The translations under genes were made by a program, and so were the position numbers. A stretch of 63,528 nucleotides of DNA, filler included, from Bigelowiella natans CCMP2755 (taxonomy: Eukaryota > Protista > Cercozoa), in assembly GCA_000320545.1 (NCBI GenBank). It is 4 parts of 4 records of this genome, joined end to end, with 100 filler letters (N's around TTAATTAATTAA, not from the genome) between each part and the next. Parts side by side here need not be neighbours in the genome. Positions count along the whole stretch, not along the records: positions 48,840 to 59,672 come from ADNK01003595.1; 3 more parts are not named here. One strand, written 5' to 3'. How positions within the stretch are numbered: position 1 is the first letter of the stretch; every line of letters starts with the position of its first letter. The notes beneath the pieces are model-generated. The model made no database searches. It saw only the letters and a program-made list of their open reading frames with translations, and had not been told where the DNA came from. Positions 6,043 through 59,672 of this stretch are shown here, piece by piece.

Positions 6043-6436
6043 TGCTTCATCCAGATCTGCAGCAGGACAGACATCCTTACAGAGGGGGTTTTCAAATCCG
6101 TTTTAAATCCATCAAGACAGCTCGGACTAGGGCCGACTTTTTATTTTTTAAAATAAATAATAATTTAATTTTTAGGTAAAATGTCGGTGGACTAGTTCGA
6201 GTATTTCCTGTCGTCTTTCTGGTCCCGAAGAGAATTCTGCCGATGATGATGATGATGATGATGATGATGGTGTCGAAAATCAACAAGATATTGAATCTGC
6301 GACAAGTACTTGCGACCGCATGTGCTTCTCCTCGGCTGGAGAAAGGCCTGCTGCTCGACGATATCGTGCTCCTCAGATTCCAGAAGGGTTCAGATCACCT
6401 TCTGTTACCCCATCCATCCATCCATCCATCCATCCA

Positions 6437-48839: not shown

Positions 48840-48840
48840 G

Positions 48841-49254
48841 ATTTTGCGTCTTATCGGCATTGTTGGGGAACGAAGGTACTCTGAGCAAATCAAAGCTCTC
48901 GGCCTTTCTCTCCATGAAATGGCTACGTTGCACAGAGAGGTTGACCCGATCATTATGATGATGATAGCGATGATGATGAGGATGAGGATGATGATGATAA
49001 TGATGCAGGAAATGGTGTAGTGATTAAACGCTAAAGGGAATACGTGATACATATATATAATATCAAGATAAAAAATATATGTATTACTTTTTGCGTGTAT
49101 TGTGTGTGTGTGTGTGTTTCCCCCCCCTTCTCATTTTCCTCCTCCTCCTCCTCCTCCCTCCATAACCATACCGCTTGTCATTTTCTAGGCCAAACGGCAA
49201 AACTGCGAGCAGAAAGAGCAAATCGAGACACTTCGGGAGCAGCTGAAGGTGCCG

Positions 49255-49304
<50 letters not shown>

Positions 49305-50322
49305 CAAAAAGAACAGATAAGAATCCCACAACAACACTACTAAAAACACGTCGACGATGATGACACAAACTTGATCTGTGACATGGCCTTGAAAGCTCAT
49401 CATTTATCTCAGTTTTAATCTACACATCGTCGTGAGCTTCATCATCATTATCATCATCATTATCATCATCATTATCATCATCATTATCATCATCATTATC
49501 ATCATCATCATCATCATCACAATCATCATGCATATCACATCATCACACACATAACCGCCACCAGGTCGCAAAAGCCACCAATCGGAAGCTCACCAAGGAC
49601 TTCGTCATGCAGATGCGGAAAGCGACAGAGATGTAACGACCACAAACGAAAATGCACACGCTAACTATATATGTATACACATTTATTAACATATATTATT
49701 ATGATATAACACTCCCCTCCGCCCGGCTGCCTTATATAATACGCAGATCGGAAGCTTTTTCATCGACACCGGTCCGACATGCGGAGACGCTGGGTACTGT
49801 TATCACTACTTTCACCGATACACAAACTACCCACTCATTGAAAAGACTCTCGGAGAATCGATTTTAGTATTTAAAAGAATAAATGAATAACACGCGACGC
49901 AACCTATGATGATTTTGGCAAAGAAAGAAAATATGCAACCAGTCACGCAACGATTCGTTGTTGCTCCTGTGAAGGGATTTTCAACTATTTTTTTGTGGTC
50001 CTGCTGTCGCTATCGGTGGAGGGAATCGAAAATTGCACGCGTTCTTCGGTTTACGGAACTGCTATTCAAGCTGTCCGTGGACAGCGGCATCACTAGATCA
50101 GCAACTTAGTGTGATATTTTGCTTGAGTCTTCGATGACTACTTTGTCATTTCGAAATCTAAGGATGTCCCTCGTTCTTTCCTATCCATTTCTCTTCTTTG
50201 TAGAAACGTTTCCTCACTGCTCCCCCACCCCTCCTTCCCTGTCTTCTCATATGCATTTTTCAGCTGCCGCCCTGATGTCTCCAAAGGATCCATCTCTCCA
50301 ACGACGCCTTGATGACGAGTAG
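48841..50322 (+). CDS. 3' exons of an unidentified coiled-coil protein gene
   Basis: AG/GT-bounded segments ILRLIGIVGERRYSEQIKALGLSLHEMATLHRE, AKRQNCEQKEQIETLREQLK, VAKATNRKLTKDFVMQMRKATE and a terminal AALMSPKDPSLQRRLDDE*. Confidence 0.35.
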
Positions 50323-51276
50323 ATAGAGCTCGATTCGAAATTACAACATCGTCTGTACATCTAGACAGATAATATCACAGGGAGCATGTCATCATGCTAG
50401 CTAGCTAGGCTCTCGTACTCTCATGTCACACACGCTGGCTAGCTAGCTAGCTCTAGAGCTAGCTAGCATGCGATGCCTGCTCATCAATGCGTATTGGCTT
50501 TGTTCAAGAATGACAAGTAATGACATGTGCAGCTAGCTAGAGCACGTGAGTCGCATAATTCGCATAATTCGCGCGCACACATCTAGACATCTAAACTTGC
50601 TCTAGCTAGCTAGCAGCGCGTACTGTCTCTGTCTAGCTAGCTAGCCATCATGCATCGATCATTTAGCTGTTAGCTGCTAGCTAGACAAGCAGCAGCAATC
50701 CATGCTAGCTAGTTAGCTAGCTATCTAGCTATCTAGCTGTGCGCTATAGCGCACGTCTTGACGCATCAAGCCTGTACACGTGGCATCTCTAGCTAGGTAG
50801 CTGCTACAGATCTAGACGACTACATGCATGCTGGCATGCGCACTCATGGCTAGCTTGGTTGTCCACTTTGGAGGCAAAAATTGTCACGATCGACGCAAAA
50901 TGTGATGCTTGAGAGCGCTGTCAAAAGCCAAAGTTGCGATTGCGCGAACTGACATGGCGGGGAAAAATCGCGAACGCAGCGCAGCATGAGAATGAACACG
51001 TGCAAATGGGTCAGCGAATCAAACATGTGCATGGCAGATGCGAGAGCAAACGGAGGCAAGTCAGCAAATTGCAAAATGAAGCGCGTTTTGAAATGCATCA
51101 AAGAAAAATTATGTGTGTAAATGTTGCATTGAATGAATTTACATTGAAAAATACATGCAGTTGAGATTGAAATGAGGTGGCCAAAAAAGGATGAACAGAC
51201 CACAGATGGAGCTTTTTCTCATCAGGAAAGCGATGAGACACATGGAAATGGGTCAATTTTTTTTTTTTTTTTTTGT

Positions 51277-54151
51277 CTAAAGTTTTGCTGCCGCGTGAGC
51301 AATCTGTTCGTACGCGTTTTTGCAGTCTTCAGAACAGAATCGCAACTTGAACTTGATGCTCTTGTGGGCCAAGCAATCCTTGTGGCCGACCTCGTCGCAT
51401 TCAGCACATCGCCCAAGCTCGTTGGGCAAAACGGGCCTCTTGCAAAAGCCACACTGCGGAGGATCGGACGTGCGGCGCTTCATGGACTTGCCCACAGTCT
51501 TGGCGGTCTTGGCCTTCTTCGCAGGAGACACTCTGGCACGCAAAGTGTGAGGGCGTTTCTCACCTGAGAAATGCATGGGTTACGAACATACCAGCATGTA
51601 AGTAACAATCAAAATGAGTTGTGCACCTTTGCCTTTGGCTGCACTGACACTTTTCTTGACGACATCAACAAGAGATGTTTCTTCGTCGTCGGATCCACCA
51701 GCGAGCTTCTTCCCCTCCATGCGGCCAAGGTCATGCCAGTGCTTTCCAAAACTTTGAAGGGCACTGCACTTGGTCAAGATGGAATTGAACTTGGTCTCGA
51801 ACAGCGCTTTTTGAGAAGATGGATCCTCAGTTGTGGTCATCGAGTGGACTTTGGCCTTGGTGCGGTTGGTGATCTCCTGGTGGCGGTTCAACTGAATGCA
51901 GTTGTGTGTGAAGTGCAACAGTGCACACGCGTCGAACCCTTGCCCACCATGGGCAATGAGGACAGCAGATCTTTCCTCATGCAAAGTGAGGCACAGATGT
52001 TCCATCACATCGCCTTTTCTGTCCACCGCGAAAAGCTTGCCGTCCACGGTGATGGACTTTGGACTCGAAGTGACGATGAGGTTTTCGCGCTTCCCAAAGT
52101 CCACTTGCGCGCAAGACCCGTTCTTCGCGATGATGTGTGCGTCAATCATCGGAGCGAAAGAGGTCTTGGGCTTTTGTGGACGTCGATCGTGCTCGCATGC
52201 ATGGAGCACGTCGACGTCGTCATGCCCACACTTGTTGATGAGCTCACTGAAAGAGTCAGAGTTTTCAGGGAGACACCGAATGGTGAGGGTGAAGTCGCCA
52301 GTGACATGGCGATCAAAATCCAGCTGTTTGCCAGCATGGATCTTGTTGACGTAGATGTTGAGTTGCTTGTCGTCGAAAGACTGCCCGATGTCGAAAGCTC
52401 CAACAAGAGTGTCAACAAAGACGTGATCTGACAAAAAAGCACAGTGTCACGAAAATGCTGGCACATTCGCAACTGTGAAAAAAAGTGCACACTTGTTGAT
52501 TTGCCCTTGTTTTGCATGACGATCCCTAGTTTCTTGACGACGACTCCGGTGACGATGTTGAGCTCGATCGCATCTTCCTTGAGTTGAATTCTTTCTGCAT
52601 CCTCCATCGCACGTGTTGCCTTGCATTGATCAACACAATTCTGGAAACTGTTCAATGCAACCTCTGGAATGACTCGCTTGTTCTTCTCTGGAGCCATCTT
52701 GTTTTTGACAAGGTGGAACTGGATTGCGAAACTGAGCCACTTGTCGTTCTTGGGAACTTGAAACTTCTCGTGTGATGCCTCCCATGATGACACGTCATGT
52801 TTCTTCATGAAAAGACTTGTGAGGTGTTTGGACCCTGAAACACAGATGACGTCAGAACTGAGGCCACAGTGACACAAACAAAAAAGATGACTCACATTGT
52901 TTCTTTTGTGGACTGACGATCATTTGCTTGATGGTGTGATCTTTGAGGCTCATGACTTTCTTGATCTCTGTCGTGCAATCTTTCTCGTCCATTCCGCGAA
53001 CCTTGCTGATCCATTTGAAGTCCTTGGGTGCGTCATGCACATCGTTGGGTCCTGGGTTGCAAAATTTCTCCAAAAGGTTCCAGCTGTGTTCGCTCCACTG
53101 TGCGAGTCCAACCACCAAGTTGAGGCAGGTCGCACCGCAACCACCTTTGGAATGCGAGCTGGTGAGCTCTTTCCAGTCCCCAATGTGTTCTTTGGTGAAC
53201 CTAGTCGGACCCAACCTGGCATCAAATGCCTTGGCTTCCAGGTAGCTAGTCTTCATTTCGGCGATGGCATCCCACACTGCAGACTTGATGCTGATTTTGT
53301 CAGCTTCATTGACAAGATGACCATGTTTGCGGATCATCTTGTTGTCCTCTGGGTCATCTGTGCAGAAAACGTTGCAAGTGACTTTGCGATGACGTTTGGA
53401 ATTGCAGATTGCCAGCAGTTCTTGCAGTGCGACGCGGCGGTGATTCCCATCGATCACTTCCGCCCAGATGCCATCTTGAACTTGGAGTGTGTTCTCCGAC
53501 ACGAATTGCTTGAGTTCCACCCGTGAACGTTTGAGAGAAGTTTGCTTCTCTTTGCACACGGGCGCAGAAGGGCGAACAAGTGCGCCAAGCACAATGTGAA
53601 CAGACCGGTTCCTCATCATTGAATCTCGAATCTTGCGCACTTCCCCTTGCCTCAGTTTCCGAGAAGCTGTCTTCCCACGTTCCGGACCGACAAGCTGGTC
53701 CAGCTTCAGCTCGCATGTCCCCAGAAAGATCTTGTCAACAAATGCCTCCATTTCTGCTCCGAGCTTGACTTTGGCATTGTCTCCTTCCTTCACATTTTTT
53801 TCGCACTCTGAACCAAAAGACAGTCAACGTTGTTTCGCACGAAAGTGAAAAAACCAAAAGACCTTCAATGGTGATTCCTTCTGGAAGATCACCCTGGAGG
53901 TTCAAGTCTGATTGACTTGGCGCATCTTTGCCCGGAGTTGTCTTGTCCTTCGTCTTTGGCACAGATGATGACGACTGTTCAAAGAATGATTTTGATGTCA
54001 CGAATGCACCAGTGTGTTCGTCACCATGTTTCAATTGATGAAATTGCACTGCCGATTCTGGTTGGTCTTGAGATGCAAGTTCCTGGCGGAGTTTCTTCAA
54101 ATTCTTCAGGTGTTTCTTGAATTCCTTTGCAACATCTGACAACAGTGACAT
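51277..54151 (-). pseudogene. 5-exon ParB/Srx - N6A/N4C methyltransferase-like - PHD-like zinc finger gene (876 aa), TpA-hypermutated but frame-intact
   Basis: Exons 54151-53863, 53807-52896, 52834-52493, 52427-51627 and 51563-51277 join through four phase-1 GT-AG introns into one open frame. It has the ParB motif EVIDGNHRRVAL, a SAM-binding-like VMEHL...VLIAHGGQGFDACALLHFTHNCIQLN, and C-terminal CGFC...CAEC...HKDC...FCSEDC. Only 3 Tyr in 876 aa. Confidence 0.7.
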
Positions 54152-54186
54152 TCAAGAATTCTGTTTCAAAACAAGCGAAGATGCTG

Positions 54187-54822
54187 TCAAATGCCTTGTT
54201 TTGATTTGTGTTGAGACATCTTGGCGTGTTCATTGGATCTTGCACTTGCAATGGCGCTGTTTTCAACCCATTTGTCAAGTTCAAGACCCAATGTTTCCCT
54301 CCCAGCATCCGGGGAAAACACCGACGCGGTGAGCGCATTCAGCACTTTCTGGTTCGCGACTTGGCGGCGCTCGGTGTTCTTCAGCGCGTGCACGTCATGC
54401 TTTTTCCATTGGGCCCGCTTGCCTGCTTCGACGGGCTGTTGGACGTGCAGCTGCCAATGGTTGTTCGGATCTGTCATGCGAGAGAAGCACCAGACAGAAT
54501 CCAAAACAGTGCATTTTCCTAGAAGGTGACACAAACACGGCATGGTCAGTGATGTGAACAATGTGAGCTGCGAGTTCCAATTGAAAGTGCAAGTCTGTCA
54601 CCCGAACCCCGTCTCACGTTCTGAACACTTCCCAAAATTGAACCCCTCACATTCACAGTCGAGCTTGCCGTGTCCTTGCTTTGGCACAATGAGGTTCGTG
54701 AGTGAGCGTAGTTGGGCGTGCACAATCGAATGTTTCCGAAATGTGCTGCGGAGCACGTGATGCTCTGGAGCACCCTCTTGCAAGGCGCCAAATGAGTGAT
54801 CTCCTCTTGCATTTGTGATCAC
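54187..54822 (-). pseudogene. Degenerate coding-like sequence upstream of the ParB gene, same strand
   Basis: Protein-like Tyr-free ORFs 54187-54561 and 54598-54822 inside the TpA-void domain; no family recognised. Confidence 0.3.
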
Positions 54823-55670
54823 GGTGAAATTGCGAAAAACGTCACGAACGAAAAATTGAAGTTTTTAAACATTAATTTTTCGGCTCGTACTCGTAGCTTC
54901 TTCATTGACCCAATTTGCAAAAAGCACTTTGTTGTCATTTTGAGCAATGTGCAATTGAACATGCAACTTCAAGATCCACATTCAACTCAACATCTCATTT
55001 CAATTCACAATGCAAAAATGATGTTCAAGAAATTGTGTCACGAATGCACTGGCATGTTCGTAACTCATGACACATGTTTGTGATCAGTGGAAAGAATGAA
55101 CGTCGTCAGTCAAGGTTCACATGGAAAGGATTCAGGACAAGATTGGTCGAACTAGAGAAGAGTTTGATGAAATCCAAATCGGATGACATTTGTTTGGATG
55201 TTTTTCAAGTCGGAAGGAGATTGTTCCCAACTGAAGGTGTGCTTCACAACGTTTGCAACAAACGAACGACATTGCAATTGTCAAACAGGTTTCTTTGGCT
55301 TCGAGTTGTTCGAGATTTTCTGCACCCACTTCGTGTCGAAGACAGAACATGACACATTTGGGGATTTGTCTCATTGTTCACAATTGAAATGTGCATTGAA
55401 TCAAAAGAATCTCAACACGTGCATTCGACACTTTGTTTCAATGGGTCTCCTGGCTCTCAGTGTGGAGCATGAGCGGTTGCAATCCAAGTGGAAACACTTG
55501 TTGATGTCATTGCGGTTCAGAGTTTTAGCGGGCTTGCGGTAGCTGCTTAGCTTTTGTGCGCGGGACTGTGCTGATGTCACTGAGTGTCAACACGCGGTCC
55601 TGTGTGCGTTTGAATTGTGTTGATGACTTGTGACTTGCGCTGCATGCATGTGCGCATTGGGTTCCGGCGC

Positions 55671-55844
55671 ATTCGCGAAGATTCTCGAATCTTCCAGAAT
55701 TCTCTCGAATTCTCTGGAAGATTCTCGAAGCTTCCGGAATGCTCTCGAAGATTCTGGAAGATTCTCGAATCTTCCGGAATGTTCTCGAAGCTTCTGGAAG
55801 ATTCTCGAAGCTTCTCGAAGATTCCCGAAGTTCTGAGAACTTCC
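55671..55844. promoter_or_regulatory. Array of heat-shock-element-like 10-bp units (GAAnnTTCnn x ~15)
   Basis: GAA recurs every 10 bp from 55677. 12 of 15 units are perfect GAAnnTTC, the alternating nGAAn consensus bound by HSF. Function is inferred. Confidence 0.65.
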
Positions 55845-56283
55845 ATGCGCATGTGCGCAGCGCAGCGTGCAGCACGAGTGGACGTGCGCATGCTGCGACA
55901 GCTCCTTGATCGTGGGTGGCGCGGCCAGACCGCTGACACGCCCCCATGGACGTGGTGACCACGATCAGAGTGCTGATGTGCACGTGCCATTTCTGCCATG
56001 GTGACAGAACTTTTGCACGGTGCTGCACATGGACGCCATTCCCAAAGGTTTCGGAGTCCGAATGGTTGGCAAAATTTTGCCGACCAAACATCGCACCACC
56101 AGACGCCTGAAACTCTGTGCAGAGGCACAAAATTCCCAGGCTTGCAACTGGGCAAGGTGCCATGGGCATGGTGCACTCCGAAATCGGCAGGAAAAATTCT
56201 TGCCTGACTGGGCAAGGTGCCACCATTTCGGTACGAACTGGGACTTGTCCAAAAAATTAATTTTTTAAACGACACCAGTGTGC

Positions 56284-56367
56284 TTCCAGAAAAAATTCTG
56301 GAATCCCTCACGTGCTTCCAGAAAACATTCTGGAACATTCTGGAACATTCTGGAACATTCTGGAACA
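56284..56367. promoter_or_regulatory. Second HSE-like array, (CATTCTGGAA)4 plus TTCCAGAA units
   Basis: ACATTCTGGAACATTCTGGAACATTCTGGAACATTCTGGAA at about 56325-56365. Confidence 0.6.
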
Positions 56368-56451
56368 CCGATCTGGTTTCCCATAGTCAGGTCCCCAAAT
56401 TTAGGAACTTCGATCGACCGTGCTTTTAACTCTTCACCTTGCCCCACCTCT

Positions 56452-56774
56452 TGTGATGAGGCGAGCTACGTACACGTCCACGTCCCCCAATGGAGCTCTT
56501 CCCTGAGAGACGAAATTGCGGGCTGGGCTCCAAATACTGTTGGCTGGCTGGGTTGCAGCCATGCCAGATCGAGAAGGAATGCCGAAGAGAATACAGTCTG
56601 CCTTCGTGGGTCTGAAGGCATCATACTCTGGTCATAGCGACATTGTTCTTCCACACCTCCACACAGGGAAGGCAGTTTTTTTCTGTCTTATTTATTTTTA
56701 ATTTCGTAGGTATCTCGTAGTATATAGCCTTATATCTTGTTCTTGTTTTGTAGGTATCCTGTCTTTGTTCCACA
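56452..56774 (-). repeat. Candidate 3' LTR
   Basis: Begins TGTGG right after the PPT and contains TATA-like and AATAAA sequence on the minus strand. It ends ...ATCACA (56452) or ...CCAACA (56538). No second copy in the window. Confidence 0.5.
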
Positions 56775-57007
56775 TTCGCCCCCATGATTGTGCAGTGTCT
56801 GGAAGACAGACACTGTGCAATTATATAATCCATAGCGTAATTTACATTCGCCCCCATCGGAGCTGTGCACATAGCTGTGCATATAGTCCATAGTAAGATA
56901 CGCAAGGAAAGGTACACACATATAAAGATGTGTGCCATTAAAACCTTGCAGCCTATATGTTCATATGTTGTAGGTTTCTAGATGGACGTGGGGCTTTCAT
57001 AGGGCGA

Positions 57008-59668
57008 CTAAGCGGACGTGGGGCCGACAAGGCGAGGGAGCTTGTAAGGTAGAGTCTTTGTAGTTATTTTTCTTTTTCTGGTGCCTTGTAGCATGATGGT
57101 TAGTTTTTCTCTGTATGATATAGGGAACAAGAAATCACAGTGTTTCTTGTTGCTAGGTCCTGGTAGAGCCTTGGTAAGTATATCAGCGGGATTGTCCTCC
57201 CCAGGTATTTTGTTTATGCAGATCTGCTTGGTTTGATAGTTATCACGAACATTGTGATATTCTATCCTTATGTTCTTGCCTTTCTGTGTGAATCCAGGCT
57301 TGGCTGCAATGGAGATAGCTGCTTGAGAGTCACAATACACAGGTACAGGGTTCGGTATTTTCATTTTTAACTCCTGTAGTAACTGAGTGACATACACTAA
57401 CTCTCTGCATATATCTGATAATGCTATGTACTCAGCCTCGCCACTGGACATAGCAACGACCTTTTGCTTGTTGCTCTTCCAGACAACAGGTGCGTTGCTT
57501 AGCGATATGAAATATCCTGAATATGATTTACCCGTTTTCTTGCAGGTCTTCCAGGAAGCATCGACGTAGGCTTTAAGCTCAGGTTTGGACGCTGCTTTAA
57601 AGGTAATTCTTTTGTCCTTTGTGTTGACCAGATATTGTAGTAAGCGCACTGCAGCGATGTAGTGTATAGTTCTAGGATCTTGACTGTAGGAAGCTAGACG
57701 AGATAGAGTGTAGCAGATGTCTGGCCTAGTAGCCACCGCTGCATACATTGCTGCTCCTATGATGGATCTGTATGCCTTCTGATCTACTTTTTCATGTTCC
57801 ACGTATTCGTCTAACTTTGATCCTGTTATCATTGGTGTTTTTGCTCTTTTCGTAGGCGTGATATCATACTTCTGGGCGAGTCTGGTGAGGTAATCTTCCT
57901 GCGATATCCAATAGTTTCCCTCATTGTCGCTACCAACTCTTATGCCCAGTGTTTTCTTTAGCTCGCCTTCATCGCGAAACTCAAACTTGTCGCCTATTCG
58001 CTTCATGACAAAGTCCAGGTCTTTCTTATCTTGATATGCTATGCATATGTCATCCACGAAACATGACAATATGATGATTCTTCCTTGTCTGTGCATTATC
58101 ATTAGGCAAGGATCGGAGTAAAGCTGGACGAAGCCAATGGCGTTGAGATGCTCGAGCAAGGTAAGGCTGAATATTGCACTTGCTTGTGTCAGCCCATAAA
58201 TGCTTTTATTTACCAGTAGGGCTAGTGGAAGGCCACTGTTGTATAGCCGGATTTCATCAGGTGTCTTCGGCTTCCACCCTTTAGGTATTTCCATGTATAC
58301 TTTACAGTCCATCTTTCCAGTTAGGAAAGCTGTAAGTATATCTATCCCGTGTAGTTTTAGCTTGAGGATAGATGCTATGGCTAACATTATCCGAAAACTA
58401 TTTAGGGACAACGTCGGGGAATAAGAGAAGAAGGAGTCTTCTCCCGGGATCTGCGTGAACCCTCGCGCGACCAGCCTTGACTTATACCGAATGGTATAGT
58501 CTACATTTATTTTCTTCTTGAATACCCATTTAGATGTAACGAAATTTGTATCCTTAGGTCGCACTACCAGCGTAAACGTTCCAAGTTTTCGAAGCTGGTG
58601 CAGTTCCTCTTCCGTAGAAGGTATCCAATGCTTCTTATCATCTCCTGTGATTGCATCGTCATACGTCTTAGGAAGGTCCTCGATCTCATGTACTGATGGA
58701 GCTTTTATATTCATCAGGCGGTCGTAATAGCTACCAAGTATTCCGTAACGAATACCAGGTACTCCCCTATTTTCTCTATTCGACCTTCGAGGCTTACTTT
58801 TTGCTTTTGTTTCAGGCCCACCATCCTCTGGCAACTCGTCAGTTGCACTGGATGGTTCGGGGGCGTCCGCGTCGGCAGGACCTTCTGGATAAAGGTACGC
58901 CAAAGCCGAATCACTAACTTTGTTTCTCTTCAGCGAAGGAAACTTAAACACTGTGTGGTACCATTTAGTTACACGGACTCTTTTAATTTTCAGCGTCTTC
59001 GTGGCGACGAGAAAAGTACCAAATCTATCGTCATATCCCAACATACGTACGTATTCACCTCTAGCACCCATACCACCTGCAGGTCGGAGTTCCTTGTCAA
59101 TGTGGTTTACTCCGATGCATCCCCAGGTAGTTAGATTCTTTAGATTTGGTTGCTCATGGTGCAGTAGTTCTTTAGGCGTTTTTCTACCAGGTGTGCTGCG
59201 ATGTGAGGTGACGTTGTGGAGATATGCTGCAGTCTGAGCTGCGTAGGACCAGTATCCGACCGGTAAGCGTGCATGTTCTAACATAGCTCTTGTTTTCGCC
59301 ATGATAGTCTGTATGTGACGCTCGGACATTCCATTTTGCTCAGGTGTTCGGGCGGTGCTAGGAACCCATTTTATTCCTTCGGAGGTGAGCCAGCTATGTA
59401 GCTTTGCGCTCATATATTCACCTCCACCATCCGATCTGAATTCGTCTATGCTTCCACAACCTGGAAGCTTTCTGATGTGCTTTATGAACTGTATGGTTTT
59501 CTGCGTAACTTCGCTTTTCTTTCTCAAGAGCTCCAAGGTAACCCACCTTGTTCCTTCATGTACGAATATTACGAAATACTTGTAACCATCCATGCTGTTA
59601 GGCATGGTCTTTACATCAGAGTGAATTCTATTCCACATCCCGGTTTTTCTTGTGGATATCAGGTACAC
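57008..59668 (-). CDS. pol: Copia Pol (integrase, reverse transcriptase, RNase H), uninterrupted
   Basis: IN motifs RIHSD, FRSDGGGEY and TPEQNGMSER. RT motifs SKWVFKKK, YKSRLVARGFTQ, DILTAFL, KSIYGLTQA and FVDD. RH motifs YVDASW, EAEYIAL, YCDSQAAI and NPADILTKAL. Confidence 0.95.
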   Translation of the reverse strand: MYLISTRKTGMWNRIHSDVKTMPNSMDGYKYFVIFVHEGTRWVTLELLRKKSEVTQKTIQFIKHIRKLPGCGSIDEFRSDGGGEYMSAKLHSWLTSEGIKWVPSTARTPEQNGMSERHIQTIMAKTRAMLEHARLPVGYWSYAAQTAAYLHNVTSHRSTPGRKTPKELLHHEQPNLKNLTTWGCIGVNHIDKELRPAGGMGARGEYVRMLGYDDRFGTFLVATKTLKIKRVRVTKWYHTVFKFPSLKRNKVSDSALAYLYPEGPADADAPEPSSATDELPEDGGPETKAKSKPRRSNRENRGVPGIRYGILGSYYDRLMNIKAPSVHEIEDLPKTYDDAITGDDKKHWIPSTEEELHQLRKLGTFTLVVRPKDTNFVTSKWVFKKKINVDYTIRYKSRLVARGFTQIPGEDSFFSYSPTLSLNSFRIMLAIASILKLKLHGIDILTAFLTGKMDCKVYMEIPKGWKPKTPDEIRLYNSGLPLALLVNKSIYGLTQASAIFSLTLLEHLNAIGFVQLYSDPCLMIMHRQGRIIILSCFVDDICIAYQDKKDLDFVMKRIGDKFEFRDEGELKKTLGIRVGSDNEGNYWISQEDYLTRLAQKYDITPTKRAKTPMITGSKLDEYVEHEKVDQKAYRSIIGAAMYAAVATRPDICYTLSRLASYSQDPRTIHYIAAVRLLQYLVNTKDKRITFKAASKPELKAYVDASWKTCKKTGKSYSGYFISLSNAPVVWKSNKQKVVAMSSGEAEYIALSDICRELVYVTQLLQELKMKIPNPVPVYCDSQAAISIAAKPGFTQKGKNIRIEYHNVRDNYQTKQICINKIPGEDNPADILTKALPGPSNKKHCDFLFPISYREKLTIMLQGTRKRKITTKTLPYKLPRLVGPTSA

Positions 59669-59672
59669 ATTT

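What the first reader, a model, noticed from the sequence alone, without database searches (positions are those of the whole stretch)
51277..54151. Hidden 5-exon ParB/Srx - DNA amino-methyltransferase-like - PHD-like gene
Seen: five separate ORF pieces join through four short phase-1 GT-AG introns into an 876-aa frame. It carries the ParB/Srx signature EVIDGNHRRVAL and a Cys/His finger at the C-terminus. Between them, reverting CA/TG to TA gives VMEYL...VLIAYGGQGFDAYALLYFTYNCIQLN, resembling the C-terminal SAM-binding motif of beta-class N6A/N4C MTases (VLDPFGGSGTTAVAA...RNCIGIE). An upstream VFVDTLVG sits where DPPY would be, so the catalytic motif is non-canonical. Established: ParB-MTase fusions are typical of phages and mobile elements, and bdelloid N4CMT shows such MTases can be co-opted with a chromatin-reader domain. 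Inference: a prokaryote-derived DNA-modification module coupled to a histone reader, possibly transposon cargo. It is a victim of the TpA process and conceivably related to whatever marks the DNA.
Basis: partly seen in the sequence, partly recalled or inferred. Interest (0 to 1): 0.85.

Follow-up and report, generated by a model that had tools for sequence, protein, structure and literature searches.

The report
Transposon gene with dead-looking methylase domain
A real, spliced gene inside a cut-and-paste transposon of chlorarachniophyte algae fuses a ParB-like domain, a DNA-methyltransferase domain that has lost its catalytic residues, and a zinc finger; it is a target, not the cause, of the host's TpA hypermutation.

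Summary
The gene is real. The model needs fixing: the proposed start lies inside a fifth, GC-AG intron, and the gene runs at least one exon further 5'. One ancestral intron is now read through in frame. The gene is the second ORF of a DNA transposon. It has a conserved CTTGGTTG end, 25-bp terminal inverted repeats in an Amorphochlora copy, and a DUF6589-like (Academ/KDZ-type) putative transposase beside it, truncated here. Relatives occur in Bigelowiella natans, Amorphochlora and marine samples. ParB/DndB-like and PHD/C1-like domains have weak support. The beta-class amino-methyltransferase fold is supported by several weak but concordant tests. However, DPPY and the SAM-binding residues are lost in every homolog, including lightly mutated ones, so it is probably a pseudo-enzyme. 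The TpA process is already described in B. natans; this element is a victim. I found no published description of this fusion or transposon lineage.

The parts
50854..50878 (+). Transposon terminus beginning CTTGGTTG, preceded by CTAG
   Evidence: Same 8-mer ends L001, L002, L003, L005 downstream of the gene; in L005 it starts a 25-bp inverted repeat (24/25) at both ends. Other copies have loose ends at 50853/50854.
51116..51276 (-). 3' untranslated region
   Evidence: X1 contig 1 runs to 51116
51277..51563 (-). Last exon: basic linker and C4HC3 PHD/C1-like zinc finger (51453-51322)
   Evidence: Pfam PHD E 8e-4, C1_1 E 2e-5 for best member, both below cut-off; cysteines conserved in 5 homologs; junction spliced
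51627..52427 (-). Exon with permuted (beta-class) amino-methyltransferase-like domain (52425-51726), catalytic and SAM motifs degenerate
   Evidence: alignments
52493..52834 (-). Exon, conserved segment without a family match
   Evidence: Spliced in RNA; 33-44% identical in L002, L004, L005
52896..53807 (-). Exon with ParB/Srx-superfamily (DndB/DGQHR-like) core (about 53727-53257) followed by a helical region
   Evidence: Pfam DndB E 1.7e-4, 1.8e-5 in the sister copy; NCBIfam DGQHR E 0.011; PHROG ParB E 0.008 for a homolog; motif invariant in 4 homologs
53863..54135 (-). Exon as now expressed, including a retained 78-nt ancestral intron (54052-53975) whose donor went GT to GC
   Evidence: Contiguous in X1 contig 2; intron-like in L001 and spliced out in B. 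natans model P0014
54136..54194 (-).
   Evidence: Joint 54135/54195 in RNA; GT donor in L001
54195..54518 (-).
   Evidence: 42% identical to Amorphochlora P0004, E 1e-20
55071..55522 (+). 5' fragment of the divergent putative transposase gene, cut off by an inserted repeat
   Evidence: 81% identical to the L001 ORF; 49% to the start of Amorphochlora P0015; transcribed. The C-terminal part of the Amorphochlora homolog resembles DUF6589 clusters, 0.94 with 187/256 features.
50854..56400 (.). Zone of TpA to CpA/TpG hypermutation covering the element and the inserted repeat
   Evidence: CA/TG double differences 73 against 11 for the next class

Best explanation
The gene is the accessory second ORF of a chlorarachniophyte cut-and-paste DNA transposon with CTTGGTTG ends and a DUF6589-like, Academ/KDZ-type transposase. 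Shown: it is transcribed and spliced, multi-copy, lies between the terminus and the putative transposase, and kept its reading frame under selection while copies diverged. Inferred: the roughly 950-1,000 aa protein is a non-catalytic DNA/chromatin adaptor. The finger contacts nucleosomes or a partner, the methyltransferase fold binds DNA or protein without methylating (as METTL14 or the inactive DIRS1 MTase domains do), and the ParB-like domain binds nucleotide to clamp or dimerise on DNA. Together they would help the transposase engage ends or targets, or help the element resist silencing. The host's TpA mutator then hit each copy independently, eroding Tyr codons, splice donors and possibly the start codon; it creates no TAA/TAG stops, so the frame stays open.
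For: Termini and TIR. Same two-gene unit in L001, L003, L005. No exon indels in 2,856 nt against 3 in 465 intron nt, P about 1e-8; dN/dS 0.29 in the ParB part. Splicing. Collinear profile match to 39 beta-class MTases with DPPY, motif I D/F and motif II E replaced; local score 25.2 against a maximum of 20.9 in 30 shuffles. All listed Foldseek rows are METTL14/MTA1/MTA9/CcrM. Seven of eight Atlas shape rows carry N6_N4_Mtase. TpA signature matches bioRxiv 10.64898/2026.01.13.699255.
Against: No single domain test is significant on its own: Foldseek E at least 0.011, model pLDDT 53, HHalign probability 5%, DndB and PHD below Pfam cut-offs, and the ParB model was uninformative. The transposase call rests on language-model features and motif resemblance; Pfam DUF6589 itself did not hit. 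Both Amorphochlora copies lack the ParB core, so it may be dispensable. Overall dN/dS of 0.74 is near neutral. No biochemical data.
Confidence: 0.62

Rival explanations
1. It is an active amino-methyltransferase with a non-canonical site. It marks its own element (6mA or 4mC), guided by the finger, to escape silencing or shield TpA adenines.
For: The motif IV Asp and the GxG glycines are kept and the whole fold is collinear. An invariant His in motif I and an invariant HD further up could form a variant site. KDZ transposons carry active-type TET/JBP enzymes (PMC12730594).
Against: PPY is replaced by unrelated, variable residues that TpA changes cannot produce. Motif I Asp and motif II Glu are lost in all copies. 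In N4CMT, changing SPPY abolishes activity (PMC8885841). Copies carrying the gene are heavily TpA-mutated, so there is no sign of shielding.
Confidence: 0.13
2. It is passive captured cargo or a decaying relic with no present role; transcription is incidental.
For: Overall dN/dS 0.74 and 4.0 in the finger between two copies. ParB core deleted in both Amorphochlora copies. The transposase is truncated here.
Against: Architecture and most intron positions are kept at 25-40% identity across at least five lineages, always next to the same terminus; exons are free of indels.
Confidence: 0.15
3. It is a domesticated host gene that takes part in marking or mutating TpA sites.
For: Most relatives come from TpA-depleted contigs; it is expressed and has DNA- and chromatin-binding-type domains.
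Against: It is multi-copy with transposon ends and is itself eroded. No deaminase domain was detected. Viral inserts and other transposons are also hit, and an ADAT2-like candidate is proposed.
Confidence: 0.04
4. The middle domain is not methyltransferase-derived and the resemblance is a common alpha/beta arrangement.
For: Best VIA match is a SirA-like protein, Z 7.3, and all Z are under 8; single-sequence HHalign to YhdJ found nothing.
Against: Sequence profile, language-model features, Foldseek, VIA (MTA1 Z 6.9, M.MboIIA Z 6.2) and Atlas shape search all point to the same permuted class, with motifs in the expected order.
Confidence: 0.06

Closest known systems
KDZ (Kyakuja-Dileera-Zisupton) transposons carrying TET/JBP genes (PMC12730594)
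   Same: DNA transposon carrying an accessory gene derived from a DNA-modification enzyme
   Different: Cargo here is ParB-like + pseudo amino-MTase + finger; target duplication is 4 or 10 bp, not 7-8 bp; Pfam KDZ not hit; host is rhizarian
Academ transposons (AcademX 3-4 bp, AcademH 9-10 bp duplications; PMC10045372)
   Same: Duplication length 4 or 10 bp fits; large second enzyme-derived module; transposase motif order D..D..GxxH..E resembles Academ (my recall, untested)
   Different: No XPG nuclease or helicase; termini CTTGG rather than the TAG-type ends I recall for Academ
Inactive N6A-MTase domains of DIRS1 retrotransposons and METTL14 (PMC4738411)
   Same: Amino-MTase fold with lost catalytic residues; mobile-element borne in DIRS1
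   Different: DIRS1 domain is group-2/PCIF1-derived in a retrotransposon polyprotein; this one is permuted beta-class in a DNA transposon, fused to ParB-like and finger domains
Bdelloid N4CMT (PMC8885841)
   Same: Permuted beta-class MTase fused to a C-terminal chromatin-type domain in a eukaryote
   Different: N4CMT has SPPY, is active, is a host gene and has a chromodomain
Phage/prokaryotic ParB-N6_N4 MTase fusions
   Same: Domain order ParB then permuted MTase (one such cluster is Atlas row 2)
   Different: No sequence relative found in phages or viral contigs; motifs degenerate; introns; extra domains
TpA hypermutation of Bigelowiella natans (bioRxiv 10.64898/2026.01.13.699255)
   Same: TpA to TpG/CpA signature on foreign and mobile DNA
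   Different: Here on a transcribed DNA transposon, seen in several marine relatives, with apparent sparing of CTA/TAG contexts

Membership tests
beta-class N6A/N4C DNA methyltransferase (PF01555) | Permuted fold, motif IV before motif I | tested here: met
   Collinear HHalign, score above all shuffles; concordant but weak fold searches
beta-class N6A/N4C DNA methyltransferase (PF01555) | Catalytic [DSN]PP[YFW] | tested here: not met
   Only the Asp is kept; the next residues vary; 29 of 39 reference sequences show the motif
beta-class N6A/N4C DNA methyltransferase (PF01555) | SAM-binding DxFxGxG and motif II acidic residue | tested here: not met
   D to I/V, F to H, E to N/T/H; GxG kept
beta-class N6A/N4C DNA methyltransferase (PF01555) | Pfam profile match | tested here: not met
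   No PF01555 hit for window or homologs
ParB/Srx superfamily (DndB/DGQHR-like) | hhDGxHR signature after a strand | tested here: met
   Invariant in window, L001, L004, L007
ParB/Srx superfamily (DndB/DGQHR-like) | Profile or fold match above threshold | tested here: inconclusive
   Three libraries agree but below cut-offs; AF2 model pLDDT 44, no fold match
PHD finger | C4HC3 zinc ligands | tested here: met
   Present in window, L001 and P0011; His replaced by Cys in two homologs; last pair is Cx3C
PHD finger | Trp of the H3K4me3 aromatic cage (own knowledge) | tested here: not met
   Position is V, D or T; C1 scores as well as PHD
TIR DNA transposon | Terminal inverted repeats and target duplication | tested here: met
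   L005: 25-bp TIR and TTAG on both sides, 4 or 10 bp given the telomeric repeat context; only one end survives in the window
TIR DNA transposon | DDE transposase | tested here: inconclusive
   DUF6589-like by Atlas features 0.94; two Asp motifs conserved, Glu motif seen in one sequence; no Pfam or PDB hit
Dileera/Zisupton (KDZ) | 8-bp target duplication | tested here: not met
   L005 flanks allow 4 or 10 bp, not 8 (PMC12730594)
Academ | Transposase homology plus XPG nuclease or helicase | tested here: inconclusive
   No nuclease or helicase hit in either ORF; no Academ reference sequence or paper was available
N4CMT-like epigenetic writer | Methyltransferase activity on DNA | not testable with these tools
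   Needs an in vitro or long-read modification assay

The most novel reading that the evidence does not exclude
This is an undescribed transposon lineage whose accessory protein, built from a prokaryotic ParB-methyltransferase module, is a counter-defence factor: it binds or marks adenines in its own DNA in an arms race with the host TpA deaminase, either as a pseudo-enzyme or through a new His-based active site.
Probability: 0.12. Interest if true: 0.85.

Novelty: new variant of a known kind. Interest (0 to 1): 0.56.

Why it matters
It adds a new cargo type, a ParB-like + pseudo-methyltransferase + finger protein, to the DNA transposons that carry epigenetic tools, and points to a transposon lineage I found no description of in Rhizaria. 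It also gives a natural test set for the newly reported TpA mutator: several independently mutated copies let one read its context preference, show that it reaches a transcribed DNA transposon, and show how it rewires splicing (GT to GC donors, one kept and one lost). It warns against blanket TA restoration when inferring motifs.

Tried and rejected
Start at 54151: rejected, intronic. Shorter intron 2 (38 nt): breaks the frame. Blanket TA restoration: rejected by homologs. P0005: spurious repeat match. P0002 ('Myxococcota MAG') as evidence of bacterial origin: rejected, it reads into the eukaryotic intron. hAT domain beside L003: lies outside the terminus at 6077, so unrelated. Introner origin of the introns: they share a short motif but I did not show TIRs; left open. 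The true start codon is unresolved: candidate intron 54601-54519 shows no joint in RNA, and L001 has an ATG just above it that is GTG here.

Full report
OBSERVATION. The piece 48840-59672 holds a host-like intron-rich stretch, a TpA-free zone from about 50850 to 56400, and an intact copia pol ORF. Contigs of run X1 skip 51564-51626, 52428-52492, 52835-52895 and 53808-53862 exactly, with 0-2 other letters in coding exons, so this copy or a near-identical sibling is transcribed and spliced. The run's RNA status is a guess in the record, but exact intron skipping shows it is RNA. An 86%-identical copy (L001) has GT there. The exon above it matches the N-terminus of Amorphochlora P0004 (42%). A 78-nt stretch, 54052-53975, is an intron in L001 and in B. 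natans model P0014 but is retained in frame here. From the first in-frame ATG (54477) the expressed frame is 965 aa; the true start is unresolved.

METHOD NOTE. Database searches and folds were run exon by exon, by reference; the joined model was not sent to any search tool, so a full-length homolog search was left out. A joined translation was used only inside local scripts, to check the frame and compare with loci already fetched.

HOST AND RELATIVES. Exon 2 found one relative, whose 90% cluster includes a Bigelowiella natans gene model. Exon 4 found relatives in Amorphochlora amoebiformis and marine metagenomes at 25-38% identity. The window is therefore most likely B. natans; this is an inference, as run labels are coded. 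DNA runs hold several diverged copies.

THE ELEMENT. The 8-mer CTTGGTTG ends the window copy at 50854 and four other loci downstream of the gene. In L005 it begins a 25-bp inverted repeat at both ends of a 4,370-bp insert in a telomeric repeat, flanked by TTAG (4- or 10-bp duplication). A second gene accompanies it: head-to-head in L001 and L003, tandem and partial in L005. Its full-length Amorphochlora form is 793 aa (P0015). Its C-terminal half resembles DUF6589 clusters by language-model features (0.94, 187/256), and it has acidic motifs in transposase-like order. Pfam and PDB give no hit, so the superfamily stays open between Academ-like and KDZ-like; the duplication length excludes the 8 bp of Dileera/Zisupton and fits Academ. 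In the window only the 5' part survives (55071-55522), cut by an unrelated high-copy repeat, so this copy is non-autonomous and has one end.

DOMAINS. ParB-like: DndB, DGQHR and PHROG ParB profiles all hit the same stretch below cut-off, and the signature is invariant in four homologs; the structure model was useless. Both Amorphochlora copies have deleted this core. Methyltransferase-like: the family profile's only PDB hit is a methyltransferase motif I (E 0.09); Atlas features give N6_N4_Mtase at 0.76, a lead only; a low-confidence model (pLDDT 53) retrieves METTL14, MTA1, MTA9 and CcrM in every listed Foldseek row (E at least 0.011), MTA1 and M.MboIIA by VIA (Z 6.9, 6.2) and PF01555 clusters by shape (TM about 0.4). 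Against a profile of 39 beta-class enzymes that I built, the alignment is collinear and scores above all 30 shuffles. These states are shared by lightly mutated Amorphochlora copies (TpA 0.56 and 0.86) and cannot arise from TpA changes. The domain was degenerate before hypermutation. Finger: C4HC3-like, conserved in five homologs, without the cage Trp; PHD and C1 profiles score alike. Histone reading is plausible, not shown.

SELECTION AND THE MUTATOR. Between window and L001, exons have no indels in 2,856 nt while introns have three in 465 nt (P about 1e-8); both frames are open; dN/dS is 0.74 overall and 0.29 in the ParB part. CA-versus-TG double differences number 73 against 11 for the next class, the mark of independent resolution of the same ancestral TpA. 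Surviving TpA sites are enriched for CTA/TAG contexts (46 of 77) relative to double-hit sites (6 of 49; P 1e-7; P 0.007 against the copia). This process is described for B. natans viral inserts and TpA-poor transposon genes, with an ADAT2-like candidate (bioRxiv 10.64898/2026.01.13.699255). The adjacent unrelated repeat is depleted too and the copia is not. Nothing links this gene causally to the process.

MECHANISM. Shown: transposon context, expression, splicing, earlier selection, hypermutation. Inferred (about 0.6): a non-catalytic DNA/chromatin adaptor that serves the transposase or shields the element from silencing, by analogy with inactive DIRS1 MTase domains and METTL14 (PMC4738411) and with epigenetic cargo of KDZ elements (PMC12730594). 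Rivals: decaying cargo (0.15), active variant methyltransferase (0.13), unrelated fold (0.06), domesticated part of the mutator (0.04).

NOVELTY. My literature searches found no description of this fusion or element; the library is incomplete. It works like known cargo-bearing DNA transposons but is not a member of the active beta-class methyltransferases or of N4CMT by the features tested. Verdict: real, a new variant of a known kind, interest 0.56.

Noticed in passing
window 55523-56400: Separate repeat, about a hundred-fold above single-copy depth in DNA runs and extremely abundant in RNA (+ strand), with a sharp left end, varied flanks, 10-bp tandem arrays and TpA depletion (0.14). SINE-like by layout; no Rfam or tRNA match.
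   Followed up: partly
window 50320-50853: CTAG-rich, TpA-rich, CC/GG-poor repeated sequence directly flanking the transposon end; variants exist in DNA runs. Unexplained.
   Followed up: no
window 57008-59672: Intact 886-aa copia integrase-RT-RNase H frame with normal TpA (0.98) next to fully depleted DNA: probably a recent insertion or an exempt element.
   Followed up: partly
window 50854-55522 and L001: Surviving TpA sites favour CTA/TAG contexts, suggesting a sequence preference of the mutator that I did not see in the parts of the preprint I read.
   Followed up: partly
window 54136-54194 and 53975-54052: Two donors changed from GT to GC by TpA hits: one is still spliced, the other is retained in frame.
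   Followed up: yes
window 51578-51606, 52444-52474, 53996-54024, 55035-55065: Several introns of the element share a roughly 29-nt near-palindromic motif; L005 introns share a different short motif. Possibly species-specific splice or branch signals.
   Followed up: no
L005 7925-12294: Complete internally deleted copy inserted in a telomeric repeat array of Amorphochlora, with the transposase fragment inverted relative to L001 and L003.
   Followed up: partly
L003 3660-3780: Clean in-frame deletion of the ParB core in an expressed Amorphochlora copy (P0011).
   Followed up: partly
L002, L004, L006, L007 (whole contigs): Marine relatives of unknown hosts are also TpA-depleted (0.01-0.44), so the mutator may be widespread in related lineages.
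   Followed up: partly
P0002 and P0009 (match window 51629-52315 and 51388-51715): Labelled as a Myxococcota MAG protein and a Prorocentrum lima transcript; both look like misassigned chlorarachniophyte sequence.
   Followed up: partly
window 48840-49640: End of a host-like gene with microsatellite-rich introns; not identified.
   Followed up: no
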